DNA of 64,000 nucleotides, taken from IMG/VR virus record IMGVR_UViG_3300018080_000098, positions 124,001 to 188,000 of that record. The stretch is one strand, 5' to 3'. The position numbers and the translations under genes are program-made. Positions 33,233-48,684 of this stretch are shown here, in pieces (position 1 is the stretch's first letter; the number at the start of each line of letters is the position of its first letter). Below the pieces are notes generated by a model that was given only the letters and a program-made list of their open reading frames with translations, had not been told where the DNA came from and ran no database searches.

Positions 33233-34678
33233 ATGCATGCGGTAAATCATTCTCAAGCGGAAAACTGGAGTACTTTTAATGACTTAGCCAAGAGGACTCT
33301 TGAATATGATCCTTTGGTGAAAGAGGATCTAACTCGGACGTTCCTCCAAATCGAACAGTTGATATTCAAGGGTGTAGACTATCTCCTGATGGCTACTACG
33401 TTCGTGGAAGACAATTTGTGCTATCTTCTCGCAGAGATAGCGTCTGGAGTCATTAAGAGCCGGAAGGTCTACAAGGGGAAACGGGTCCGCCGACGAGTTG
33501 CCATGAACGACGAGATAGAAATGGGCGCTGAAAACAAGCGGATCTTCGGTATCGGCTTCGATCTCTTCAAACTCTCACGCATGGATCGCCAACACGCAGT
33601 TCCCTTCTCCAAACGTATCATTCGCACACTCCGCATTTCTACCAGCCACTACGAAAACATCCTTACCGCGTTCGCTAAGGTGGGCGCCCGCTACATTGAA
33701 GTATCCGACGATCTCGCCCACACTACCCTGCGCTTGATCAACCAACGCCAGAAAAACGAGAAGCGTGCTACGAAAAAGGGAGCAGCTTCCGAAACAGCGC
33801 TTACCAAGCAGGCCGAAGAGTTCATCGATCAAATGGACCTCCTCGAGCTCGATATGGGGTGCGTTGAGCCCAATCTTCTCTACGGCACCATCCGCGCAGT
33901 AGTTCGCATCCTGAAGCGCGTGCGCGTTCTGCAAGAGCGCATTCTGAAAGCGTACTCCCGTTTGGTGCTGAAGCCAGTGAAAGGCCGCGCACAAACAGAG
34001 ATGGAGGCCCTTGACCTGTTTCAATCAGGTAGCCTGGGCCTCTCACGCGCCATCTCCTTGTACGATCTCCGCTGCGGCACCAGCTTCCCTACCTTCGCAA
34101 ATTGGTGGATACGTCAGAAAATACTCGGGAGCGCGAAGCACAGCGGTTCCCTCATCAAGTTACCTGGTTCCGTAATCGAACGCTACCAGGAGATCACGAA
34201 AGCTGAACGTTTCTTTGAATCCAACCCCGACCTCCGCGATTCTTATACTATAGAAGATGTAGCCGCACGTTGCAAAACTACAGCCAAGTCCGTCGAGCTT
34301 GTACTCCGAAAAGTGCGCAGCACCCGTGTGGTCTCTCTAGAGTCGATGGTGAGCAGCAACGAGGAGGGGTACGAAAGTGACCTGGCAGCCGACCGAGCTC
34401 TGCTTGATGAGTCAATGGAAGAAGAGGAGGCGCTTCAGGCCACCTCCGAGTTCGTTTCTCAAGTACTCAGTCATGTAGAGGAAAGCCAACGCAACCTCGT
34501 GTGCCTGCGTTACGGAATCATTGAGCGCGTGGTATCTAAACTTGACCCTCGTCAAGAGGTACGTGAGCTCTTCCGCCAAGCTGCATGCAAAGCTTTGCTG
34601 CAGCAGAAGATGTCGATGCGTGCTAACAGCCATCTAGCGATGCTCCGGGTGGAGGAGCTTCCCGCCGACCAAAAATAG
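33233..34678 (+). CDS. Phage RNA polymerase sigma factor (RpoD/sigma70 family)
   Basis: Region 2 DLFQSGSLGLSRAISLYDLRCGTSFPTFANWWIRQKI, LIKLP, region 3 TIEDVAARC...VVSLE; region 4 degenerate. Confidence 0.88.
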   Translation: MHAVNHSQAENWSTFNDLAKRTLEYDPLVKEDLTRTFLQIEQLIFKGVDYLLMATTFVEDNLCYLLAEIASGVIKSRKVYKGKRVRRRVAMNDEIEMGAENKRIFGIGFDLFKLSRMDRQHAVPFSKRIIRTLRISTSHYENILTAFAKVGARYIEVSDDLAHTTLRLINQRQKNEKRATKKGAASETALTKQAEEFIDQMDLLELDMGCVEPNLLYGTIRAVVRILKRVRVLQERILKAYSRLVLKPVKGRAQTEMEALDLFQSGSLGLSRAISLYDLRCGTSFPTFANWWIRQKILGSAKHSGSLIKLPGSVIERYQEITKAERFFESNPDLRDSYTIEDVAARCKTTAKSVELVLRKVRSTRVVSLESMVSSNEEGYESDLAADRALLDESMEEEEALQATSEFVSQVLSHVEESQRNLVCLRYGIIERVVSKLDPRQEVRELFRQAACKALLQQKMSMRANSHLAMLRVEELPADQK

Positions 34679-36452: not shown

Positions 36453-37730
36453 ATGGGCGCGAAGAAAAAAGCCAAGCCTGTCATCGTGCATCCAGCGGAA
36501 GCTGCGTCCGCAGCATTCGACGAGATGACCGAACTCGACTGTATCAACCTACGCCAGGGACAGCGAGTAAAAGATGTTCTGTCTACCGGCAGCCTGTCGC
36601 TAGACCTGATTCTTGGAGGTGGCTTTAAACCAGGTCTTATGGGCACCATCTTCGGTCCCGAAGGTAGCGGCAAATCCACGCTTCTGCTTTCCATCCTTGC
36701 CAGCTCGCAGCTGCTGAATATCCCTGCATGCCTCTACGACCCTGAAGCAGGTTCGGACCCCGTGTACATGCGCACGATGGGCATCGATCTCAACTACCAA
36801 ATCAAATACAAAGAAGGAAAAAAGACCCACACCCGCTCAGGCTTCTTCTACACACAGCCCGATACAGGGGAAGCAGTTTACCGCCACATCCTTCGAGTGC
36901 TCAGCAAACTGCCTATCGTGGATGATGGACCACCCCGTATGCTGTTCCTCATAGACAGCTTTGCCGGTATGGGCAGCGAAGAAGTCGATGAGGTTGGCGA
37001 TGGAGGACGCATCGCAGATGAAGCCCGTATGCACAGCTACTTCCTTAAAAGGGTTGTTCCCCGCCTGCGCCGACGAGGAGCTCTCCTCATCGGTACAAAC
37101 CAGATGCGCACTAATATCGGTGGCTACGGAGCCCCCCAACAAGAAGCTGGCGGCAAAGCGCTTCGATTCTGGCCAGGCTACAAAATCCGCTCCTCTGTGA
37201 AGCGCGTAGAACCCGATAAGATTGGTGTTCAGACAGTGCCAGTCATCTGGCGTACCACGAAGAACAAAGCGTTCCCTCCCTTCCGCAGTACAGACATGCG
37301 TCTGATGCTTGGTAGGGGACTCGATAAATCGTACGACGCCTTCTACTTCTTGAAGCACCTTGGGCTTCTCGAAATCCGTGCTGGCAAGCAGAAGATCCAT
37401 ATCGATGGGTACGATAACAAGGTACTCAGTTGGGCAGATTTCCGTCGCACCGTAGAGCAACCCAGTTTCCGCGATATGTGCTTCGCGATGCTCCGGGAGA
37501 ACTCTACGTACAAAACGTACTTCGAGAACAGCAACGAAGCAACCTACTTCTACGACGCCGACTATGACGACCCTGACGACCCTTCCGAAGATGATCTCAA
37601 GCAGCAGGTAGAAGACGAAGCAGCTGAGTACGCAGAGGGTCGACAAAAACGTCTCAAAGCTGGTAAAAAGCCTGCCAGCAAAAGCAAGCGAGAAGACCAC
37701 GAAAGTGTAAGCTTCGACGAATCGTTCTGA
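36453..37730 (+). CDS. recA: RecA/UvsX recombinase
   Basis: STGSLSLDLILGGG, IFGPEGSGKSTL, IDSFA, NQMR, GGKALRFW, KNK. Confidence 0.95.
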   Translation: MGAKKKAKPVIVHPAEAASAAFDEMTELDCINLRQGQRVKDVLSTGSLSLDLILGGGFKPGLMGTIFGPEGSGKSTLLLSILASSQLLNIPACLYDPEAGSDPVYMRTMGIDLNYQIKYKEGKKTHTRSGFFYTQPDTGEAVYRHILRVLSKLPIVDDGPPRMLFLIDSFAGMGSEEVDEVGDGGRIADEARMHSYFLKRVVPRLRRRGALLIGTNQMRTNIGGYGAPQQEAGGKALRFWPGYKIRSSVKRVEPDKIGVQTVPVIWRTTKNKAFPPFRSTDMRLMLGRGLDKSYDAFYFLKHLGLLEIRAGKQKIHIDGYDNKVLSWADFRRTVEQPSFRDMCFAMLRENSTYKTYFENSNEATYFYDADYDDPDDPSEDDLKQQVEDEAAEYAEGRQKRLKAGKKPASKSKREDHESVSFDESF

Positions 37731-38770
37731 TGTCTGAAGGACTCGCATCTATTACCGACGTATTCAGCTCGCTTTTCGTCTTGCTGAAACGTCGCGACGA
37801 TGGCACCTACGGGGCGCTGGCTATCACCGCTGCGCCCAGCCTTCACGGACCCGCTCTCCCATTCGATGCAGTAGAGCCCGGTGTGTACCGGTTCCATTGG
37901 ACTGCCGATGAAGCGAAGCAGGTTTCCATGGCGCTGCGTAAGCTGGGCTACATCACCTACTTTTTCAACTTTGAGCGCTTACAGGAACAATTCACGCCAC
38001 TACGTGAACTGACTCCTCTTGCGGGCGCACAGCCCACGTACCCACATCTAGCGGAGATTGCCGAATACCTTCCCGAATGCCAGATCTACGTAGAAGTGTT
38101 CGGAGGACGCACCCCACTTTTGATGGCGCGCACTCCAGCTCCCGTCGAAGTTTTCAACGATTACGCTCGAGCAGCCATCTCCTTTTTCCACGTTCTGCGA
38201 GACCCTGAGCTGTTCACTGATTTCTACCTCCTTGGGCGTGTTCTGCCACCGTCGCTGCAGCTCCCTGCGTTCCATCTGTTTTCCGCGTGGGAACTGCTCA
38301 GCGACAGCGATGCGGCCCTTGCATCTTACGCGTGGTACTGTTATGTTCGCCAGGCGTTCCCAGAGGTATCTGTACCAGAAGAACGGCAGGAAATACCAGA
38401 CGGCACACCAGCAAAGGTGATGGCAGCTCTCCACAGCGTAGACTACATGCTTCCGCGGATACACAACCGTTTGTACCGTGTGCAGATAGAGCACAATATC
38501 ATAGATGCAGTGCTCAAAATTTACGATTCGGACAAAACCCTCTTTTGGGTAGACCCTCCCCACGAAGGGGCAGGAGCACTCGACCTCGCAGGTACCTACG
38601 ATCTGCTGTCCCATCTGGATATGCAGGAAGGCTCTGTAGCCCTGTACGACAATCAGAATCCAAACATCCGACAGATGATGCGGATTAAAGATGGACCCTG
38701 GAAAAACTGGGAACCGGCGCAGTTCGGTCCCGCAACAGTGTACCTGAAACAGTGTACAACCGATGCCTGA
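37730..38770 (+). CDS. D12-class (Dam-like) DNA adenine methyltransferase homolog with altered motifs and N-terminal extension
   Basis: IYVEVFGG, VEVFND, VQIEH...IYDSDKTLFWVDPPH (canonical YxEPFxG and DPPY). Confidence 0.75.
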   Translation: MSEGLASITDVFSSLFVLLKRRDDGTYGALAITAAPSLHGPALPFDAVEPGVYRFHWTADEAKQVSMALRKLGYITYFFNFERLQEQFTPLRELTPLAGAQPTYPHLAEIAEYLPECQIYVEVFGGRTPLLMARTPAPVEVFNDYARAAISFFHVLRDPELFTDFYLLGRVLPPSLQLPAFHLFSAWELLSDSDAALASYAWYCYVRQAFPEVSVPEERQEIPDGTPAKVMAALHSVDYMLPRIHNRLYRVQIEHNIIDAVLKIYDSDKTLFWVDPPHEGAGALDLAGTYDLLSHLDMQEGSVALYDNQNPNIRQMMRIKDGPWKNWEPAQFGPATVYLKQCTTDA

Positions 38771-41283: not shown

Positions 41284-43725
41284 ATGCCCCTCATCGAATA
41301 CGAATCCCTCGATTTCGAGAACGCCTACATCTACCGGAAGTGTAGCTTCCCCCTGGAAAATCAGGGGCTCGTGCTCGTCCGCGGCCTCAACGTCGACGAT
41401 GGCGGCTACCTGGGTGCTGGCAAGTCTTCTATCTTTGAGGTGTTTGCTTCCCTTCAGGTGGGAAGAGGCGGTAAAAGAGAGCGCCGCCAAGGCAACTTCC
41501 GCACCAACCTGGTGAACTCGTTCGTCGGGGAAGATATGGTAGCTTCCCTCAAGCTCCGCGTCGACGGCCATCCGTACGAAATACGACAGTACCAGCAGCA
41601 CCACCGTTTTCACAACAAAATACTGGTCATCGATCGCGTGACCGGACAGGACATCCGACCCCGCTCCAGTGGCCACTCTCCCTTCAAATGGGTGCGTGAT
41701 GAGTTTCTGCGTATCGATGAGACTACGTTCTTCAATCTCATCTATCTGGTGCAGGAGCTTAATAATGTGATGATCCACGGGAAGGAGTACGAGCGCCGCA
41801 ATCGCTTGACAGCGATGTTCGATTTGGATATCTACGATGAGCTCCGCGCACTAGCTAAACGGGCCCTCTCAATGCATACTACTTCCATGTCGGACTTCGA
41901 GGAAGTCCGCAGCGAGCTTAGAGAGGTAAAACAGAAAATCTTCGCCCTACCGGACTTGGTAGACCTCGAAGCGGAGTTCGAAACAGCGGAAGCCCTCCTG
42001 AACCATATGCAGGAGCAGCACGAAGAGGATACTCAGGAATACACGCAGGTAGCCGATCTCTGCTCAAAACTTCGGCAACGCTCCACAGGACGTCGGCAAA
42101 TCATGTCGAAGTTCAAAGGCAGCTCCCTGACAAACACGTTCGACCACCCCAAGGATATTACCATTCGCAACGTGAAAAGATGGAAGAGTCGCTATGATAA
42201 CTTCAGCGCTGACTACATGGCTGCCCAGACAGACCTCGAGAAGCTCGAGAAACGCGATGCCCTTCGTGCCCAACTATTGAAGCTGAGCGACCGTGATGCA
42301 GAAGAGATTCAGGACGACTTGACCGACACCAAGACGAAGCTCACCTATATGAATCAGGTCGAGCTCCCTCAATCGGAAGAACGTCAGAGCCTGCTCATCA
42401 AATTGCAGCGGTTGACGGAGCCCGTTACACCGCTGGAAGAGCTTGAGGATGAGTTGGAAGCTGAGCAAAAGGAAGAGACAGAACTCAAGCGTGACGTGAA
42501 GGACCTGGATGCCGAAGTGCGTGAAGCTGTATGCCCACACTGCAAGCGCCCCTTTGATATGACAGCTGAGGAGCTAGCGGAGAAGCGAGGACGCTTAGCT
42601 ACTGCGCGGGACAGACTGCAGGAGCTTACACGAACAATCCATAAGCTGAAGAAGGAAATCAAGGCCTCCCGCGACATCAAAAACATCCGTGGGCGACTCA
42701 AGGCGTTCGAGACGCAGCGCTCCCCCGAGGAAGTGACAGAAGATATTCGGGAGCTTTCAGGTAAAGAGCGCAGGCTCGCCTCCGAACTCGAGACGTCGCG
42801 CCAGCGTACCAGGATAGAAGCAGAACTGGAGACGATGCCCACCGCGAGCAAAGATGAGCTCATCGAAAAGTGCAGCAAGCTTCGTCGCAGTGTCGAACGC
42901 GCCAGGGAACGCCACGAGGTGGGGAAGTTCATTGTGGAGAAGTTGGAGGAGTTGAAAAACCTCCCCAAGGGAAGCTTGGACGAAGCACAAGGACTACTAC
43001 GAGAACTTCAAGGACGCATGACGAGGATGTCGTCGAAAATTTCACAGGCGAGCGCAGATGCAACACACCTGAAAGAGCGTGTCAACGAGCTGCGTCAGCT
43101 ACTTCGGCGGGAGACCACCCTGAAGCGCACGTTGGAAAAGCAGAAAGCAATCGTCTCCGAGATTACGTGCTTGGAAGCCCTGAACAAAGCGTTCGGCACC
43201 AACGGTATGAAACAAGACCGCTTCGCCACCATCCTATCCGATGCGGCTGAGCGTACAGTCCCTGCATACTCAGATATCCTGTGGCCAAACCGTAACGTTT
43301 CCCTAGACTTGTCCGGTGAAGATGGCTCCTCGCTCCAGTTTGCGCTGGGGCGCCAGTCGGGAAATGTGGCCACCAGAAGCAGTATGCTCTCTGGCGGCGA
43401 ACGCCATAAAGCAGGGCTCGCTTTCCTTTTCGGGCTGCGCGACCTCAAGGAGCTCTACACGGGCAGCCGGTCCAACGTTCTTATCGTGGACGAGCCCTTC
43501 GGAAACCTCGATCCTCTCGGAACCGAAGGACTCATTTCCATCTTCGCTCTGCTCAAACAGAAGTTCGGTTCCGTCTTCGTCATCAGTCACAGACCAGAAG
43601 TTCTGTCCCATCCAGTGTGGGACCAGACGTGGTGGGCCATTCGCGAAAACAACAACGCGACACTTTATTTGGAAGACCCACCAGCGCGGTACCATCAAAT
43701 TGCCAACAACCTTGTAAAACAATAA
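41284..43725 (+). CDS. sbcC: SbcC/Rad50 ATPase
   Basis: GAGKSS, Q-loop YLVQ, coiled coil with CPHC Zn hook, LSGGE, IVDEP, VISH. Confidence 0.92.
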   Translation: MPLIEYESLDFENAYIYRKCSFPLENQGLVLVRGLNVDDGGYLGAGKSSIFEVFASLQVGRGGKRERRQGNFRTNLVNSFVGEDMVASLKLRVDGHPYEIRQYQQHHRFHNKILVIDRVTGQDIRPRSSGHSPFKWVRDEFLRIDETTFFNLIYLVQELNNVMIHGKEYERRNRLTAMFDLDIYDELRALAKRALSMHTTSMSDFEEVRSELREVKQKIFALPDLVDLEAEFETAEALLNHMQEQHEEDTQEYTQVADLCSKLRQRSTGRRQIMSKFKGSSLTNTFDHPKDITIRNVKRWKSRYDNFSADYMAAQTDLEKLEKRDALRAQLLKLSDRDAEEIQDDLTDTKTKLTYMNQVELPQSEERQSLLIKLQRLTEPVTPLEELEDELEAEQKEETELKRDVKDLDAEVREAVCPHCKRPFDMTAEELAEKRGRLATARDRLQELTRTIHKLKKEIKASRDIKNIRGRLKAFETQRSPEEVTEDIRELSGKERRLASELETSRQRTRIEAELETMPTASKDELIEKCSKLRRSVERARERHEVGKFIVEKLEELKNLPKGSLDEAQGLLRELQGRMTRMSSKISQASADATHLKERVNELRQLLRRETTLKRTLEKQKAIVSEITCLEALNKAFGTNGMKQDRFATILSDAAERTVPAYSDILWPNRNVSLDLSGEDGSSLQFALGRQSGNVATRSSMLSGGERHKAGLAFLFGLRDLKELYTGSRSNVLIVDEPFGNLDPLGTEGLISIFALLKQKFGSVFVISHRPEVLSHPVWDQTWWAIRENNNATLYLEDPPARYHQIANNLVKQ

Positions 43726-45124: not shown

Positions 45125-46270
45125 ATGGCGAAGAAAGACGTTACGAAGGGACTCGACCCTGATCTGTTCGATGCGGGGCTCGACGATGACGAGTCTGATA
45201 AAGAAGAGATTACGGAGGAGGGTAGCTCCGAGGAGGAAGCTCCCTCTGAGGAGACCCCTTCCGTTGCTGAAGAGGCTCCTCCTACCGAGGAAGAGGCTTC
45301 CGAGGAAGCTGCAGCCGATGAGTCCAAAGATGAGGAGCAAAAAGACGACGTGCCGGAAGAGGCTGTTTCGGAAGAGAACGACCCGGAGTCTGAAGAGGCT
45401 ACTGAGGAGGGCACAGCCGACGAAAGTACGGAAAAGCATACAGAGGAGAACGATGGTGCTCCTGAGGAGGCCAGCAAGAAGGGTGATGGGGGAGGGGAGG
45501 ACGGTGGGGACCCTTCGAAGGAAGAGGAACCAATCGCTCCTGCGGACATAGATTCAATAGCGGCCACTTATGTGGTACAGCGCGGTTTCACAGATACGAA
45601 TGGAAAGACGTACCATCCTGGGGACGTCATTCCTATTCAGTGTCGCCACTGTGCTTTGTGGGAGCGAGAATGGTTGGGCAAAAAACGTTGTAGTCCTGGA
45701 CGTCGTTTGGACGAAGATACTGTGATGCATCCAGAGCGCTATTCTTGCGAGACCTTCTTTATTTGCAAGGAGAACGACCCGGAGCTCACTACGTTCCTCA
45801 ACATGTCGGTGCCTGAAATTCTGACCGTACGCGCAATGCTGCCTGGCATCAAGAAGATTCTGCGCGCGGCTGATTTTCTCGACAAGTGGGCGGAGCGTGA
45901 GGATTTCAAGGGTGATAAGGGGGAGGTGTTCACGAACGCCAAGGGTTTCGTGACAGTTTTTAGTAGCTTGGAGCAGCTACTCTTGGCGGAAGGATTCATG
46001 CGTGAGTACATCAAGGCAGCATCCAAGCGTGCTGCCTACACCAAGCGTCCCCCGCGCCCGAAGTTCGAGCCAGGTGATTGGATCGAGTGGAAGGATTTGA
46101 AGACAGGTGAGACGATAGAAGGCATCCTTCTTTCCAAGGGAGCTGGTAATATCCACTTCGCGGGTACCAAGGTACACGCAGGGCAGAAGTTCACGTTCAA
46201 GCTCAAGGAGTGGAAAAAGAAGTGCGAGCCCAAGATTACCCGGAAGACGTCTTCTCCTGATGTCGAGTAG
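45125..46270 (+). CDS. Protein with long acidic disordered N-terminus and Cys-rich core
   Basis: GGAGGAG SD; ~130 aa D/E/S/A-rich region; CRHC...C...C. Confidence 0.75.
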   Translation: MAKKDVTKGLDPDLFDAGLDDDESDKEEITEEGSSEEEAPSEETPSVAEEAPPTEEEASEEAAADESKDEEQKDDVPEEAVSEENDPESEEATEEGTADESTEKHTEENDGAPEEASKKGDGGGEDGGDPSKEEEPIAPADIDSIAATYVVQRGFTDTNGKTYHPGDVIPIQCRHCALWEREWLGKKRCSPGRRLDEDTVMHPERYSCETFFICKENDPELTTFLNMSVPEILTVRAMLPGIKKILRAADFLDKWAEREDFKGDKGEVFTNAKGFVTVFSSLEQLLLAEGFMREYIKAASKRAAYTKRPPRPKFEPGDWIEWKDLKTGETIEGILLSKGAGNIHFAGTKVHAGQKFTFKLKEWKKKCEPKITRKTSSPDVE

Positions 46271-46294: not shown

Positions 46295-47932
46295 ATGGAA
46301 CGAGACCTCAGTTATCTCGATACTCTAGAAGTCGATACACTCAAGGAAGCTATCCTTGTCCTCGAGGAGCTGGAGGAGACATCCGGCCCGAAAGCCCGCA
46401 AGCAGGTCATCGAAAAGCACAAGACCAACCCTGTACTTCAGGAGTTCTTCTTGCGTGCGTTGGGGACCGAGAAGTACTACGTTCGTTTCAAAGAGGAAAT
46501 CCTGTCCGCCGCCGAGAGCTATTCTCCTCTCGATTCGTACAAGAAATTTCTCTCCGCTCTCAATGCATTGTGCGAGCGTAGGGTTACGGGAGATGAAGCT
46601 CGAGAGAGAGTGACTACGTTCCTTTCTAAATGCCATCCCCGCCTTCGGAAGTGGTACCTGCGAGTGCTCGACCACGATCTGCGTATTGGTGTAGGCCGTA
46701 CCAGTATCAACAAAATATACGGGACTGGTTTCTGGTTCGGAGTGGAGGAGGACGAGTTTCACTATCATGGGTGCTGCCTTGCGAAAGACTACGAAAAAGT
46801 GGTCACGGAGGAGAAGCCCCTCACCTACCCGGTGGCCGTCGAGTTCAAGCTGGATGGCGAACGCGCTTTGGTGTACGTGTTTCCTGACAAGCGTGAGATC
46901 CAGGTGTACACCCGTGGGCTGCTTCGGAAGACCGAGGTGGAGGGTGTGGAAGCGCTCGTGGACCAGTTTATCCAGGTGACCGCGAAGCTGAACGAGCTGC
47001 GTGGGGAGCCTGAGAACACCCCGTTGTTTTTGGATGGGGAGTTCCTGGCCACGGTTTGGAATGACACCTCGAGTGTGGTGGGTAGCACGACGAACTTCGA
47101 TGCGGAGGAGTTCCTGGCGGACGTGAAGGTTCTCTTGTTCGACTGGGCTCCTGTCGAGGACTACATCAAAAAGAAGTTCGACGTTCCGTGGAAGCCCCGG
47201 AAGCAGTTGCTCATGCGGGCGGCTGGTGCCAAGGGTCCTTACGAGAAGGTAATGCAGGCGGCGGACAACATCTACGTGCTGGGTCATCGTATTGTACATA
47301 GTGAGGAGGAGCTCAACGCTTTTCATGCGTGGGCGTTGGATGGTGATTTTGAGGGGACGATGATCAAGGTGCTTGACGCGCCGCACGTTTTCCATCGGAG
47401 GCACAAGTACGTTCTGAAGCTGAAGCCTACGAAGGAGGAGACGGGTGTTATCGTGGGGGCTGTAGCGGGGGAGAAGCAGAACGCTGCAGCGTCTCCTCGA
47501 GACAAGGAAATCATTTGGAACGCGATGGTGGATGATTTCGAGGGGGCGGAGAATGACGGGTACTACTACCATTGCTACGTGGACAATCCTGAAGAGGTAG
47601 CGGAGCACTTGCGGACGTTGGTGAAGGATGATAGAGATCGTCGAATCACCACTCATATAGATGGTGCTGTTTCCTATCGTTACAGTGCTCGGTTGGGTGC
47701 GTTCGTGGTGAAGTTGGGTGAGGATGAGGTGAACATTGGTGGTGGGTACAAGTACAAGGCGGGGCAGGATGAGCGAATGGAGTTCTGGCAACGTCGCGAA
47801 GAGTTGGTCGGCGTTAAGATAGATGTGAAGCTACAAGGAGACAAGGTCAAAGTAGCGAAGGCCAGGTTTAACAGTTTCGTGAGGCTTCGTTGGGACCTGA
47901 CGGAACAGCAGAACAGCGAAGAAAGCGCATAG
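46295..47932 (+). CDS. ATP-dependent DNA ligase
   Basis: EFKLDGER (motif I KxDG), LDGEF, LFD, EGTMIK, KLKP, OB domain with GGG and RFNSFVRLRWD. Confidence 0.92.
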   Translation: MERDLSYLDTLEVDTLKEAILVLEELEETSGPKARKQVIEKHKTNPVLQEFFLRALGTEKYYVRFKEEILSAAESYSPLDSYKKFLSALNALCERRVTGDEARERVTTFLSKCHPRLRKWYLRVLDHDLRIGVGRTSINKIYGTGFWFGVEEDEFHYHGCCLAKDYEKVVTEEKPLTYPVAVEFKLDGERALVYVFPDKREIQVYTRGLLRKTEVEGVEALVDQFIQVTAKLNELRGEPENTPLFLDGEFLATVWNDTSSVVGSTTNFDAEEFLADVKVLLFDWAPVEDYIKKKFDVPWKPRKQLLMRAAGAKGPYEKVMQAADNIYVLGHRIVHSEEELNAFHAWALDGDFEGTMIKVLDAPHVFHRRHKYVLKLKPTKEETGVIVGAVAGEKQNAAASPRDKEIIWNAMVDDFEGAENDGYYYHCYVDNPEEVAEHLRTLVKDDRDRRITTHIDGAVSYRYSARLGAFVVKLGEDEVNIGGGYKYKAGQDERMEFWQRREELVGVKIDVKLQGDKVKVAKARFNSFVRLRWDLTEQQNSEESA

Positions 47933-47945
47933 AAGGAGGCAAATT

Positions 47946-48569
47946 ATGCCGAGGAAGAAAGCCCAGCAAGTAACATTGGTAGGAGTTCGCGGAGCCAAGC
48001 TGCCTGTCTCCGAGTGTCTGTTGGTAAGCGAGGACGCTGACAGCTACGTGGTACAGGCGGTCCGGAAGACACGCGGGCGTGCAGCGAACAAGCTCGCCAC
48101 GTACGTGCTGCCGAAGTCGATGGTGCAGTACTATTATTCGGAGGAGGACATCGAGGGTGACGTTGACGGTGTCCCCGTGGCGGCTGCGAAGGCTGCTCCT
48201 CGCGCGGCAGCCAAGAAACCCGCAGCGAAAAAGAAGGTGGCGAAGAAACCCGCAGCGAAAAAGAAGGTGGCGAAGAAGGCCGCTGCTCCGAAGAAGCGTG
48301 GTCGTCCGAAGGGCAGCAAGAACAAGCCCAAGGAAGGTGCTGCTGCTCCGAAGAAGCGTGGTCGGCCTAAGGGCTCGAAGAACAAGTCCAAGGAAGGTGC
48401 TGCTGCTCCGAAGAAGCGTGGTCGTCCGAAGGGCAGCAAGAACAAGCCCAAGGAAGGTGCTGCTGCTCCGAAGAAGCGTGGTCGGCCTAAGGGCTCGAAG
48501 AACAAGTCCAAGGATGCCGGTTCGGCCAAAGCGAATAAAGCTGCATCACTTTTCGATGAGAGCTTCTAG
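47946..48569 (+). CDS. Histone H1-like / HMGA-like DNA-binding protein with four AT-hooks
   Basis: AAKKPAAKKKVAKK repeats followed by 4 x PKKRGRPKGSKNK. Confidence 0.85.
   Translation: MPRKKAQQVTLVGVRGAKLPVSECLLVSEDADSYVVQAVRKTRGRAANKLATYVLPKSMVQYYYSEEDIEGDVDGVPVAAAKAAPRAAAKKPAAKKKVAKKPAAKKKVAKKAAAPKKRGRPKGSKNKPKEGAAAPKKRGRPKGSKNKSKEGAAAPKKRGRPKGSKNKPKEGAAAPKKRGRPKGSKNKSKDAGSAKANKAASLFDESF
48213..48513 (+). repeat. In-frame tandem repeats: 2 x 30 bp, then 4 x ~60 bp (ABAB, a 120-bp duplication)
   Basis: AAGAAACCCGCAGCGAAAAAGAAGGTGGCG at 48213 and 48243; the 60-nt lines starting 48301 and 48421 are identical. Confidence 0.95.
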
Positions 48570-48684
48570 TAGCTTAGCAGTGTAGCTACCCCTCCATTAC
48601 CCCTCAAAATTACCCCAATATTACCGTTGCGCCGACATTACGTCGGCCATCCTCTACGTCAATTTGCTGTATTGGGGAAGTCCC

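What the first reader, a model, noticed from the sequence alone, without database searches (positions are those of the whole stretch)
47946..48569. H1 + HMGA hybrid: AKP repeats fused to four canonical AT-hooks
Seen: a small N-terminal globular part, AAKKPAAKKKVAKK repeats, then 4 x PKKRGRPKGSKNK made by a recent 120-bp duplication. Established: RGRP AT-hooks followed by KGSKNK match eukaryotic HMGA; bacterial examples such as myxobacterial CarD are rare. Inference: it binds the scarce A/T tracts of this GC-rich genome as a linker or architectural protein; hook number may vary between strains.
Basis: partly seen in the sequence, partly recalled or inferred. Interest (0 to 1): 0.7.

Follow-up and report, generated by a model that had tools for sequence, protein, structure and literature searches.

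The report
Jumbo-phage protein with HMGA-type AT-hooks
A giant uncultivated phage encodes a small DNA-binding protein whose four "AT-hook" motifs match those of animal HMGA chromatin proteins over 10-11 residues, and it defines a small new phage protein family with no assigned function.

Summary
ORF 47946-48569 (+) encodes 207 aa: a folded N-terminal part, an acidic linker, AKKP repeats (30 bp x2.2, identical) and four PKKRGRPKGSKNK hooks. A 120-bp duplication with 113 identical bases made four hooks from two.

- The window is part of a complete 349.8-kb jumbo myophage of 53.7% GC, not a GC-rich cell. A/T tracts are common in it.
- The N-terminal domain is a basic five-stranded Sm/SH3-like beta-barrel, not a histone H1 winged helix.
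- The protein belongs to a family of about 18 clusters, found only on uncultivated phage contigs and always directly downstream of an ATP-dependent DNA ligase in a RecA-SbcCD repair module.
- Members carry 0-6 hooks in independently expanded arrays. One member has a winged helix in place of the hooks.
- All end in an acidic-aromatic tip (here ASLFDESF). The phage's RecA carries the same last five residues, and the tip resembles the clamp-binding tails of T4 and RB69 DNA polymerase.

Best reading: a multivalent minor-groove A/T binder that tethers phage DNA to the replication, recombination and repair machinery. The closest analogue in layout is myxobacterial CarD, but the CarD domain test failed. 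The partner and the function are inferred, not shown.

The parts
43712..43719 (+). Nearest upstream copy of the phage-wide promoter-like motif (C)TTGTAAAA. It is the probable start of a five-gene operon: 170 aa, 279 aa, 381 aa, ligase, hook gene.
   Evidence: 43 sites genome-wide, oriented with the genes, mostly 17-100 nt upstream of starts. No further copy lies between 43712 and the hook gene.
46295..47932 (+). ATP-dependent DNA ligase gene directly upstream. This neighbour is conserved in every relative whose context was read.
   Evidence: PF01068, 1.5e-11. Synteny.
47933..47939 (+). Shine-Dalgarno sequence AAGGAGG, 6 nt before the ATG.
   Evidence: read directly from the sequence.
47946..48569 (+). 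The gene: 207 aa plus stop codon.
   Evidence: Homologues.
47946..48149 (+). N-terminal domain, residues 1-68: a basic (net +7) five-stranded small beta-barrel of the Sm/SH3 class.
   Evidence: pLDDT about 94; strands 7-13, 23-29, 33-40, 49-56, 60-65. Fold matches. Charge.
48066..48095 (+). Loop between strands 3 and 4, residues 41-50 (K-T-R-G-R...; family consensus GRGRG). It holds G44 and R45, two of only four invariant positions in the family.
   Evidence: (invariant G16, L19, G44, R45).
48138..48170 (+). Acidic linker, residues 65-75 (SEEDIEGDVDG). Net charge is -4 to -5 in most members (14 of 17 full-length).
48180..48284 (+). Ala/Lys/Pro-rich stretch of H1-like composition, including the perfect 30-bp x2.2 repeat at 48213-48277.
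48282..48514 (+). AT-hook array: four PKKRGRPKGSKNK hooks at 48288-48326, 48348-48386, 48408-48446 and 48468-48506. The 60-bp units are 89% alike; the 120-bp duplication is 100% identical.
48537..48566 (+). C-terminal tip KAASLFDESF-COOH. Family consensus [AS][LI]F[DE][DE]x[FWI]. Inferred to be a docking motif.
   Evidence: Compared with RB69 and T4 gp43 tails. RecA tail.
37713..37727 (+). Last five residues (FDESF) of the RecA/UvsX-like recombinase (gene 36453-37730), identical to the tip of the hook protein.

Best explanation
This is a real, conserved gene of an uncultivated 350-kb jumbo myophage. It encodes a modular protein with four parts:
1. A basic five-stranded Sm/SH3-like beta-barrel with an invariant Gly-Arg loop.
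2. A short acidic linker.
3. A disordered Lys/Ala/Pro tail carrying four HMGA-type AT-hooks.
4. A conserved acidic-aromatic C-terminal tip.

Proposed mechanism. The hooks insert into the minor groove of A/T tracts, which are frequent in the phage genome and about twice as dense in its non-coding DNA, while the lysine-rich spacers add non-specific electrostatic binding. The protein is therefore a multivalent DNA clamp or bridge. The barrel adds either a second nucleic-acid contact or self-association. The C-terminal tip docks the DNA-bound protein onto a partner of the replication, recombination and repair machinery with which it is co-transcribed (the ligase operon).

The number of hooks is tuned quickly by slippage of the tandem array.

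Shown: the anatomy, the family, the synteny, the fold class and the variable arrays. Inferred: DNA binding, the docking role of the tip, and the link to replication and repair.
For: - The gene and its repeats are real.
- The window is a complete phage with direct terminal repeats. It has tail sheath, portal, terminase, a family-A-like polymerase and topoisomerase II.
- An exhaustive profile search of 1.84 billion representative proteins finds only 18 hits (one a spurious repeat protein; the family counts about 18 clusters with the window's own), all 127-246 aa with the same layout except one 54-aa fragment.
- The order SbcD, delta-prime-like AAA+, SbcC, three small genes, ligase, this gene is conserved down to about 50% identity.
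- The N-domain is predicted with confidence and the rest as disordered. Fold matches are Hfq/Sm/SH3-like.
- The hooks match HMGA hook 2 exactly over 10-11 residues. The two older hook copies differ almost only at synonymous sites.
- One member (P0012) replaces the hooks with a winged-helix-like insert (HTH_IclR 1.1e-3, DprA_WH 0.013). The middle part therefore looks like an exchangeable DNA-binding module set between conserved ends.
- The tip is conserved in 15 of 17 full-length members. It resembles the gp45-clamp-binding tails of T4 gp43 (EKASLDFLFG) and RB69 gp43 (EKKASLFDMFDF).
- The phage RecA ends in the same FDESF, here and in a second related phage.
- A promoter-like motif lies at 43712 and none lies nearer, which fits co-transcription with the ligase.
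- A/T tracts are abundant.
Against: - There is no experimental datum, and the phage is uncultivated with an unknown host.
- No sliding clamp (beta, gp45 or PCNA type) could be detected in the genome. The polymerase looks family-A-like, a type that usually works without a clamp.
- The RecA + hook-protein complex prediction gave no answer (score 0.00).
- In more distant phages the RecA tail and the hook-protein tip are only similar in type, not identical. Acidic Phe-containing tails are general in UvsX-like recombinases.
- The fold match is at the level of a common arrangement (Z about 6).
- Gene position alone does not prove a role in replication or repair.
Confidence: 0.5

Rival explanations
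1. CarD-like transcription co-factor. The beta-barrel binds RNA polymerase (host core or the phage sigma-like factor), and the hooks anchor it to A/T-rich DNA at or beside the phage's TTGTAAAATA-type promoters to boost transcription.
For: The order of parts is the same as in M. xanthus CarD: a five-stranded Tudor-like barrel, an acidic segment, then four RGRP hooks (PMC4374960). The phage has a conserved A/T-containing promoter-like motif at 43 sites and a sigma70-like gene in the same module. In T4 the clamp-binding tails also serve late transcription factors (own knowledge; gp33 is mentioned).
Against: The CarD_TRCF_RID model finds nothing in the genome even at E<=10. No CarD or TRCF chain appears among the 50 best structural matches. 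The N-domain is strongly basic (+7), which suits nucleic-acid binding better than the RNA-polymerase-binding role of CarD's barrel. The gene sits with repair genes.
Confidence: 0.2
2. Host take-over or counter-silencing factor. The protein competes in the minor groove with host H-NS/MvaT/Lsr2-type proteins, which use AT-hook-like Q/RGR loops, or it condenses the host nucleoid.
For: H-NS and Lsr2 recognise A/T-rich DNA through AT-hook-like motifs (sequences listed; PMC8476142 found). Fast turnover of hook number would fit an arms race. A/T tracts of the phage are enriched in non-coding DNA.
Against: The host is unknown. The gene lies in a repair operon rather than among typical early take-over genes. 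The conserved tip shared with the phage's own RecA points to a phage-internal partner.
Confidence: 0.12
3. Packaged DNA-condensing protein. The highly basic tail (net +43) neutralises charge inside the capsid or is injected along with the DNA.
For: The charge is extreme, and jumbo phages package many internal proteins (own knowledge).
Against: The gene lies far from the structural genes (sheath at 87-89 kb, portal and terminase at 270-275 kb of the genome, against 172 kb for this gene). It is co-oriented with the ligase. There is no signal of capsid targeting.
Confidence: 0.08
4. Hfq-like RNA-binding chaperone. The Sm-like barrel and the basic tail act on phage or host RNAs.
For: The best solved structural matches are Hfq proteins. 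One relative's repeat region passes Pfam's 'RNA binding Region' model (P0019, 25.6 bits). AT-hooks can bind RNA (own knowledge).
Against: There are no Sm1/Sm2 sequence motifs and no Hfq or LSM Pfam hit. The N-terminal helix of the Sm fold is missing. Z of about 6 is within the range of unrelated small barrels. The winged-helix swap in P0012 points to DNA.
Confidence: 0.07

Closest known systems
Myxococcus xanthus CarD (CarD_CdnL_TRCF N-terminal domain plus HMGA-like C-terminal domain)
   Same: The order of parts is the same: an N-terminal five-stranded small beta-barrel, an acidic segment, then a disordered basic region with four RGRP AT-hooks (PMC4374960). Both are prokaryote-world proteins carrying eukaryote-like hooks.
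   Different: There is no sequence relation to the CarD_TRCF_RID domain. CarD has a further domain (residues 61-179) that binds CarG, and that domain is absent here. The phage protein has a conserved C-terminal LFDESF tip that is not described for CarD (absence in CarD not checked here). It is 207 aa against 316 aa, is encoded by a phage, and lies next to a ligase.
Eukaryotic HMGA1/HMGA2
   Same: The hook sequence RGRPKGSKNK(S) is identical to HMGA hook 2 over 10-11 residues. Both have several hooks in a disordered chain that ends in an acidic C-terminus.
   Different: HMGA has no folded domain, whereas this protein has a confident beta-barrel. The acidic end here is a 4-residue tip with aromatic anchors rather than a long acidic tail. 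Hook number is 0-6 and variable, against a fixed three in HMGA.
Histone H1 and bacterial H1-like lysine-rich proteins
   Same: The AKKP/AAKK repeat composition of residues 79-113.
   Different: There is no winged-helix globular domain. The resemblance is one of composition only.
C-terminal clamp-binding tails of T4 and RB69 DNA polymerase gp43
   Same: A core of K-A-S-L-(D)F followed by acidic and Phe residues at the very C-terminus: EKASLDFLFG, EKKASLFDMFDF and NKAASLFDESF.
   Different: No clamp gene could be recognised in this phage. The likeness covers a 6-8-residue motif and has not been tested.
Hfq and Sm-like small beta-barrels
   Same: Five bent strands. TM-score of about 0.6 normalised by the Hfq chain; VIA Z of about 6.
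   Different: No N-terminal helix and no Sm motifs. The statistical support is weak, and whether the domain forms a ring is unknown.

Membership tests
HMGA (eukaryotic AT-hook architectural proteins) | Three or more AT-hooks with an R-G-R-P core flanked by basic residues | tested here: met
   Four copies of PKKRGRPKGSKNK. The run RGRPKGSKNK is identical to HMGA1/2 hook 2.
HMGA (eukaryotic AT-hook architectural proteins) | Match to the Pfam AT_hook model (PF02178) above its cut-off | tested here: inconclusive
   hmmscan reports nothing for this protein even at E<=10, and the genome search's first look passed no candidate. The model has only 13 positions. Relative P0016 scores 13.4 bits over 4 stretches against a cut-off of 17.4.
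HMGA (eukaryotic AT-hook architectural proteins) | Whole protein intrinsically disordered, with no folded domain | tested here: not met
   Residues 7-65 are predicted as a beta-barrel with pLDDT of about 94.
HMGA (eukaryotic AT-hook architectural proteins) | Preferential minor-groove binding to A/T tracts | not testable with these tools
   This needs EMSA or footprinting with netropsin or distamycin competition.
Linker histone H1 | Winged-helix globular domain (Pfam Linker_histone) | tested here: not met
   No Pfam hit. The N-domain is all-beta, with Sm/SH3-like matches.
Linker histone H1 | Lys/Ala/Pro-rich disordered tail | tested here: met
   Residues 79-113 and the hook spacers; net tail charge +43. 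This is a matter of composition only.
CarD (CarD_CdnL_TRCF + HMGA-like) | N-terminal CarD_TRCF_RID domain (PF02559) | tested here: not met
   No hit by hmmscan at E<=10 or by a six-frame search of the genome at E<=10, while the control genomes rang. No CarD or TRCF chain is among the 50 best structural matches.
CarD (CarD_CdnL_TRCF + HMGA-like) | Acidic segment followed by RGRP hooks, C-terminal to a folded domain | tested here: met
   Linker SEEDIEGDVDG followed by four hooks. CarD's layout is taken from PMC4374960.
CarD (CarD_CdnL_TRCF + HMGA-like) | Binding to the RNA polymerase beta subunit and to CarG | not testable with these tools
   The host is unknown and no CarG-like partner was sought.
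Sm/Hfq | Sm fold: an N-terminal helix plus five bent strands | tested here: inconclusive
   Five strands but no helix. Hfq matches have Foldseek E of 5e-3 at best and VIA Z of 6.0-6.1, within the range of unrelated small barrels.
Sm/Hfq | Sequence match to the LSM or Hfq models | tested here: not met
   No Pfam hit.
Clamp-binding proteins of T4-like phages | Hydrophobic-acidic motif at the extreme C-terminus resembling the gp43 tails | tested here: met
   NKAASLFDESF compared with EKKASLFDMFDF (RB69) and EKASLDFLFG (T4). The likeness is by inspection of a short motif.
Clamp-binding proteins of T4-like phages | A cognate sliding clamp encoded by the phage | tested here: not met
   No match to DNA_pol3_beta domains 1 and 3, dnaN (TIGR00663), DNA_PPF, PCNA_N or the RB69 gp45 protein. 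A divergent clamp or the host clamp cannot be excluded.

The most novel reading that the evidence does not exclude
A clade of uncultivated jumbo myophages has its own HMGA/CarD-like 'chromatin' adaptor. An array of AT-hooks, variable in copy number and identical in sequence to animal HMGA hook 2, marks A/T tracts on phage DNA. Through a docking tip shared with the phage RecA, the adaptor recruits or competes for a common hub of the recombination and repair machinery. This would be a phage counterpart of eukaryotic AT-hook recombination adaptors such as fission-yeast Swi2.
Probability: 0.15. Interest if true: 0.75.

Novelty: new variant of a known kind. Interest (0 to 1): 0.52.

Why it matters
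Canonical RGRP AT-hooks are a hallmark of eukaryotic chromatin proteins. Among bacteria they are known chiefly from CarD. In phages they have only been noted in passing (for example in a Ralstonia corticoviral element and phage p12J, PMC1950889), and a full-text search for 'jumbo phage' together with 'AT-hook' found no paper.

This window holds a conserved family specific to jumbo phages. Its hooks are identical to HMGA hook 2, it sits at a fixed place in a repair operon, its DNA-binding module is exchangeable, and its ends are conserved. If the protein is an architectural tether, it offers a simple, small, expressible model for three questions: how multivalent minor-groove binders organise a viral genome, how hook number tunes binding, and whether the HMGA-type hook arose by convergence or by transfer.

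Its practical importance is modest until a host or an in-vitro assay is available.

Tried and rejected
1. Pfam and PHROG scans of the protein gave nothing significant.
2. tblastn and blastn against 50,697 GenBank phages gave no match. RecA is under 30% identical to that of any isolated phage.
3. A single-protein scan of IMG/VR found nothing. The N-domain alignment then found five loci.
4. PDB sequence searches with the family profile, the C-terminal 29 aa and the double-hook unit gave nothing meaningful.
5. The hunt for a sliding clamp (PF00712, PF02768, PF02916, TIGR00663, PF00705, RB69 gp45) found none. PolB was not found and Pol III alpha gave only a weak 12-bit hit. The polymerase is family-A-like.
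6. The RecA + hook-protein complex prediction returned 'no answer' with score 0.00. It is not used as evidence either way.
7. I tested whether the RecA tail and the hook-protein tip change together across phages. They are identical in the two closest phages and only of similar type in two more distant ones, so the result is suggestive but not covariation.
8. [SDAN][LIM]F[DEG] motifs at protein termini number 10, against 23 internal (0.50 against 0.27 per 1000 aa). This is not significant.
9. I could not decide whether the 2-hook allele is real or an assembler collapse. Logan k=31 unitigs cannot tell, because the short form has no 31-mers of its own.
11. BFVD and ESM Atlas searches gave only generic small-barrel matches.
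12. The H1-homologue and CarD-member readings are rejected for the reasons given in the membership table.

Full report
**1. What is in the sequence**

It starts 6 nt after an AAGGAGG and 13 nt after the stop of the upstream gene.

Residue by residue:
- 1-68: an N-terminal part.
- 65-75: an acidic stretch, SEEDIEGDVDG.
- 79-113: Ala/Lys/Pro-rich repeats.
- 115-187: four hooks, PKKRGRPKGSKNK, spaced 20 residues apart.
- 198-207: the end of the protein, KAASLFDESF.

Tandem Repeats Finder gives a 30-bp unit x2.2 at 100%, a 60-bp unit x3.9 at 89% and a 120-bp unit x1.9 at 100%. The history is therefore one hook, then two hooks (an older step: 6 differences, 5 of them synonymous), then four hooks (a very recent step: 113 identical bases).

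In the whole 350-kb genome only this ORF carries more than one RGRP.

Unitigs (k=31) from public run X1 contain the junction words that only the duplicated forms have, at depth of about 7.5 against a flank depth of about 10. The repeated segments stand at about 1.7 times flank depth. The four-hook form is therefore not an assembly invention, although X1 may be the sample the window came from.

**2. What genome this is**

The window is bases 124001-188000 of a 349,793-bp virus record with direct terminal repeats, rated complete. The record encodes tail sheath, portal, large terminase, a family-A-like DNA polymerase and a two-subunit topoisomerase II, so it is a jumbo myophage.

GC content is 53.7%. 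No isolated phage is close: there are no DNA or protein matches for the locus, and RecA is under 30% identical to that of any isolated phage. The runs that hold the sequence are sediment and seawater metagenomes. There are 1465 A/T runs of at least 6 bases, 382 of at least 8 and 111 of at least 10. The long runs are 1.4-2.2x more frequent than a first-order Markov model gives, and about twice as dense in non-coding DNA.

**3. The family**

A word-based search with residues 1-80 found six relatives. An exhaustive profile search of 1.84 billion representative proteins found only 18 hits, one of them a spurious repeat protein. IMG/VR gave five more loci.

All are small (127-246 aa) and share the same plan, apart from one 54-aa fragment:
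- The N-domain, in which G16, L19, G44 and R45 are invariant.
- An acidic linker with net charge -4 to -5 in most members.
- A basic disordered middle.
- A C-terminal tip, [AS][LI]F[DE][DE]x[FWI]-COOH, present in 15 of 17 full-length members.

The middle part is the variable one. It carries 0-6 hooks. Some are degenerate (RGRKPK, RGPKPK, PGRPKK). The arrays have different repeat periods in different lineages: 60/120 bp here, 63/114 in L010, 69/93 in L011 and 48/96 in L020. The arrays have therefore expanded independently.

One member, P0012, has no hooks. In their place it has an insert of about 60 aa that scores just under threshold for winged-helix models (HTH_IclR 1.1e-3, DprA_WH 0.013). 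This swap argues that the middle is a DNA-binding module and that the two conserved ends do something else.

No relative was found in 185,579 prokaryote species genomes.

**4. Allele variation**

Contig L002 (ENA, assembled with MEGAHIT) is the same phage, with one mismatch in 12.4 kb. It lacks exactly one 30-bp unit and one 120-bp unit, giving a 157-aa protein with two hooks.

I cannot exclude assembler collapse, however. Both perfect repeats are collapsed at once, and the short form has no 31-mers of its own with which to look for it in the unitigs. Variation among more distant relatives (2, 5 and 6 hooks at 65-85% N-domain identity) does not depend on this caveat.

**5. Context**

The neighbourhood is a replication, recombination and repair module. 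In order it holds:
- ribonucleotide reductase
- primase
- a Cas4-like nuclease
- a sigma70-like protein
- a RecA/UvsX-like recombinase
- a Dam-like methyltransferase
- SbcD
- a delta-prime-like AAA+ protein
- SbcC
- three small unknown genes
- an ATP-dependent ligase
- this gene

The stretch from SbcD to this gene, and the genes that follow it, keep the same order in every relative read, down to about 50% identity.

A phage-wide promoter-like motif, (C)TTGTAAAATA, occurs 43 times. It is oriented with the genes and mostly lies 17-100 nt upstream of starts. The nearest copy upstream of the hook gene is at 43712, so the gene is probably the last of a five-gene operon that includes the ligase.

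**6. Structure**

With the 18-sequence alignment, AlphaFold2 predicts residues 7-65 as five beta-strands with pLDDT of about 94, and everything after residue 70 as disordered.

Foldseek (PDB, AFDB clusters, BFVD), VIA-align and the ESM Atlas all return small beta-barrels of the Sm/Hfq, RimP C-terminal, SH3, KOW or Tudor type. The best values are TM of about 0.6 normalised by the target, Foldseek E of 5e-3 and Z of 6-7. That fixes the fold class but no family, and it excludes an H1-type winged helix.

The domain is basic (net +7). Its most conserved feature is the loop between strands 3 and 4, with family consensus GRGRG. I read this loop as a likely nucleic-acid or partner contact. That is inference.

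**7. The C-terminal tip**

It resembles the tails by which T4-type polymerases hold their sliding clamp: RB69 gp43 ends EKKASLFDMFDF (read from AY303349) and T4 gp43 ends EKASLDFLFG (PMC6212786). This protein ends NKAASLFDESF.

Within the phage, the RecA-like recombinase ends SVSFDESF, so the last five residues are the same. The closest RecA relatives all end FDE[SA]F. In a second phage (L011-L017) both proteins again end in FDESF. In two more distant phages the tails are only alike in type: AFDEEMMFDE against ALFEDDF, and DFDNMFE against ALFEEDF. RB69 UvsX also ends in an acidic tail containing Phe.

I take this as moderate support for a docking motif with a partner shared with RecA. Three things count against naming that partner:
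- No clamp of any type could be recognised.
- The polymerase is family-A-like.
- The one complex prediction I could run (RecA + hook protein) returned no answer.

**8. Mechanism**

Established from the literature: RGRP hooks with this extension bind the minor groove of A/T tracts, and CarD's HMGA-like domain does so in a bacterium (PMC4374960).

Shown here: the anatomy, the conservation, the synteny and the exchangeable middle module.

Inferred: the protein binds phage DNA at its many A/T tracts through two to six hooks, with lysine-rich spacers adding non-specific binding. The barrel adds a second contact or self-association. The tip ties the DNA-bound protein to the repair and recombination machinery.

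The rival readings (CarD-like transcription co-factor, anti-silencing or host take-over factor, packaged condensing protein, Hfq-like RNA chaperone) are listed with their tests in the Rival explanations section.

**9. Comparison and novelty**

In layout the closest known protein is CarD, and in hook sequence it is HMGA. The protein is a member of neither family: the CarD domain model fails, and HMGA has no folded domain. It is not an H1 homologue.

AT-hook proteins have been mentioned for a few phage-like elements (PMC1950889), but I found nothing on jumbo phages. I rate it a new variant of a known kind, of moderate interest.

Noticed in passing
window 6230(-), 7989(-), 13163(-), 22911(-), 31017(+), 33156(+), 34707(+), 43712(+), 57166(+), 59833(+), 63793(+); 43 sites in the whole genome: A phage-wide promoter-like motif, (C/A)xTCTTGTAAAATA, oriented with the genes and mostly 17-100 nt upstream of starts. 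The 8-mer TGTAAAAT is about 16x enriched in upstream regions. It may be read by the phage sigma70-like protein (33233-34678). It contains an A/T tract that a hook could bind.
   Followed up: partly
window 36453-37730 (+): The RecA/UvsX-like recombinase ends in SVSFDESF, sharing the terminal FDESF with the hook protein. Clade relatives keep acidic tails containing Phe.
   Followed up: yes
window 45125-46270 (+): The 381-aa neighbour, two genes upstream, has an extremely acidic and probably disordered N-terminal stretch of about 150 aa. It starts with GLDPDLFDAGLDDD, and its length varies among relatives (303-381 aa). It could be a chaperone or counter-ion partner for the very basic hook protein. 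Its function is unknown: no Pfam or PHROG hit.
   Followed up: no
window 37730-38770 (+): A D12/Dam-class N6-adenine DNA methyltransferase sits directly after RecA, so the phage DNA may be adenine-methylated. That mark lies in the major groove and should not hinder minor-groove hooks.
   Followed up: partly
L008:434-1060 (protein P0012): This family member has no AT-hooks. It carries a winged-helix-like insert between the conserved N-domain and the conserved C-terminal tip, so the DNA-binding module has been swapped.
   Followed up: partly
window 48570-48663: The intergenic region after the gene holds an 11-bp near-repeat, CAAAATTACCC x1.9 (48605-48625), and a perfect 6-bp-stem hairpin, GCCGAC-ATTAC-GTCGGC (48631-48647). 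There is no T-run, so it is not a canonical terminator.
   Followed up: no
window 48290-48332, as laid in runs X1 and X4: Other, longer contigs in the same metagenomes (8.3 kb and 11.2 kb, the second at higher depth) match 43 bases of hook-coding sequence with 3 mismatches and then diverge. Related hook-encoding genomes therefore co-occur in these samples.
   Followed up: no
G000:C1:32572-35361 (-), outside the window: A 929-aa ORF gives only a weak 12-bit hit to the DNA_pol3_alpha model. Its N-terminus, MADNDDLFGVDD, resembles the tip of some hook-protein relatives (ALFGDNF). There is no PHROG hit.
   Followed up: partly
G000:C1 about 329-342 kb, outside the window: A cluster of the most A/T-rich 60-bp windows in the genome (up to 82% A+T at 329270-329329), all touching non-coding DNA, with several promoter-like motifs near the right end. 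It may be an early or regulatory region or an origin.
   Followed up: no
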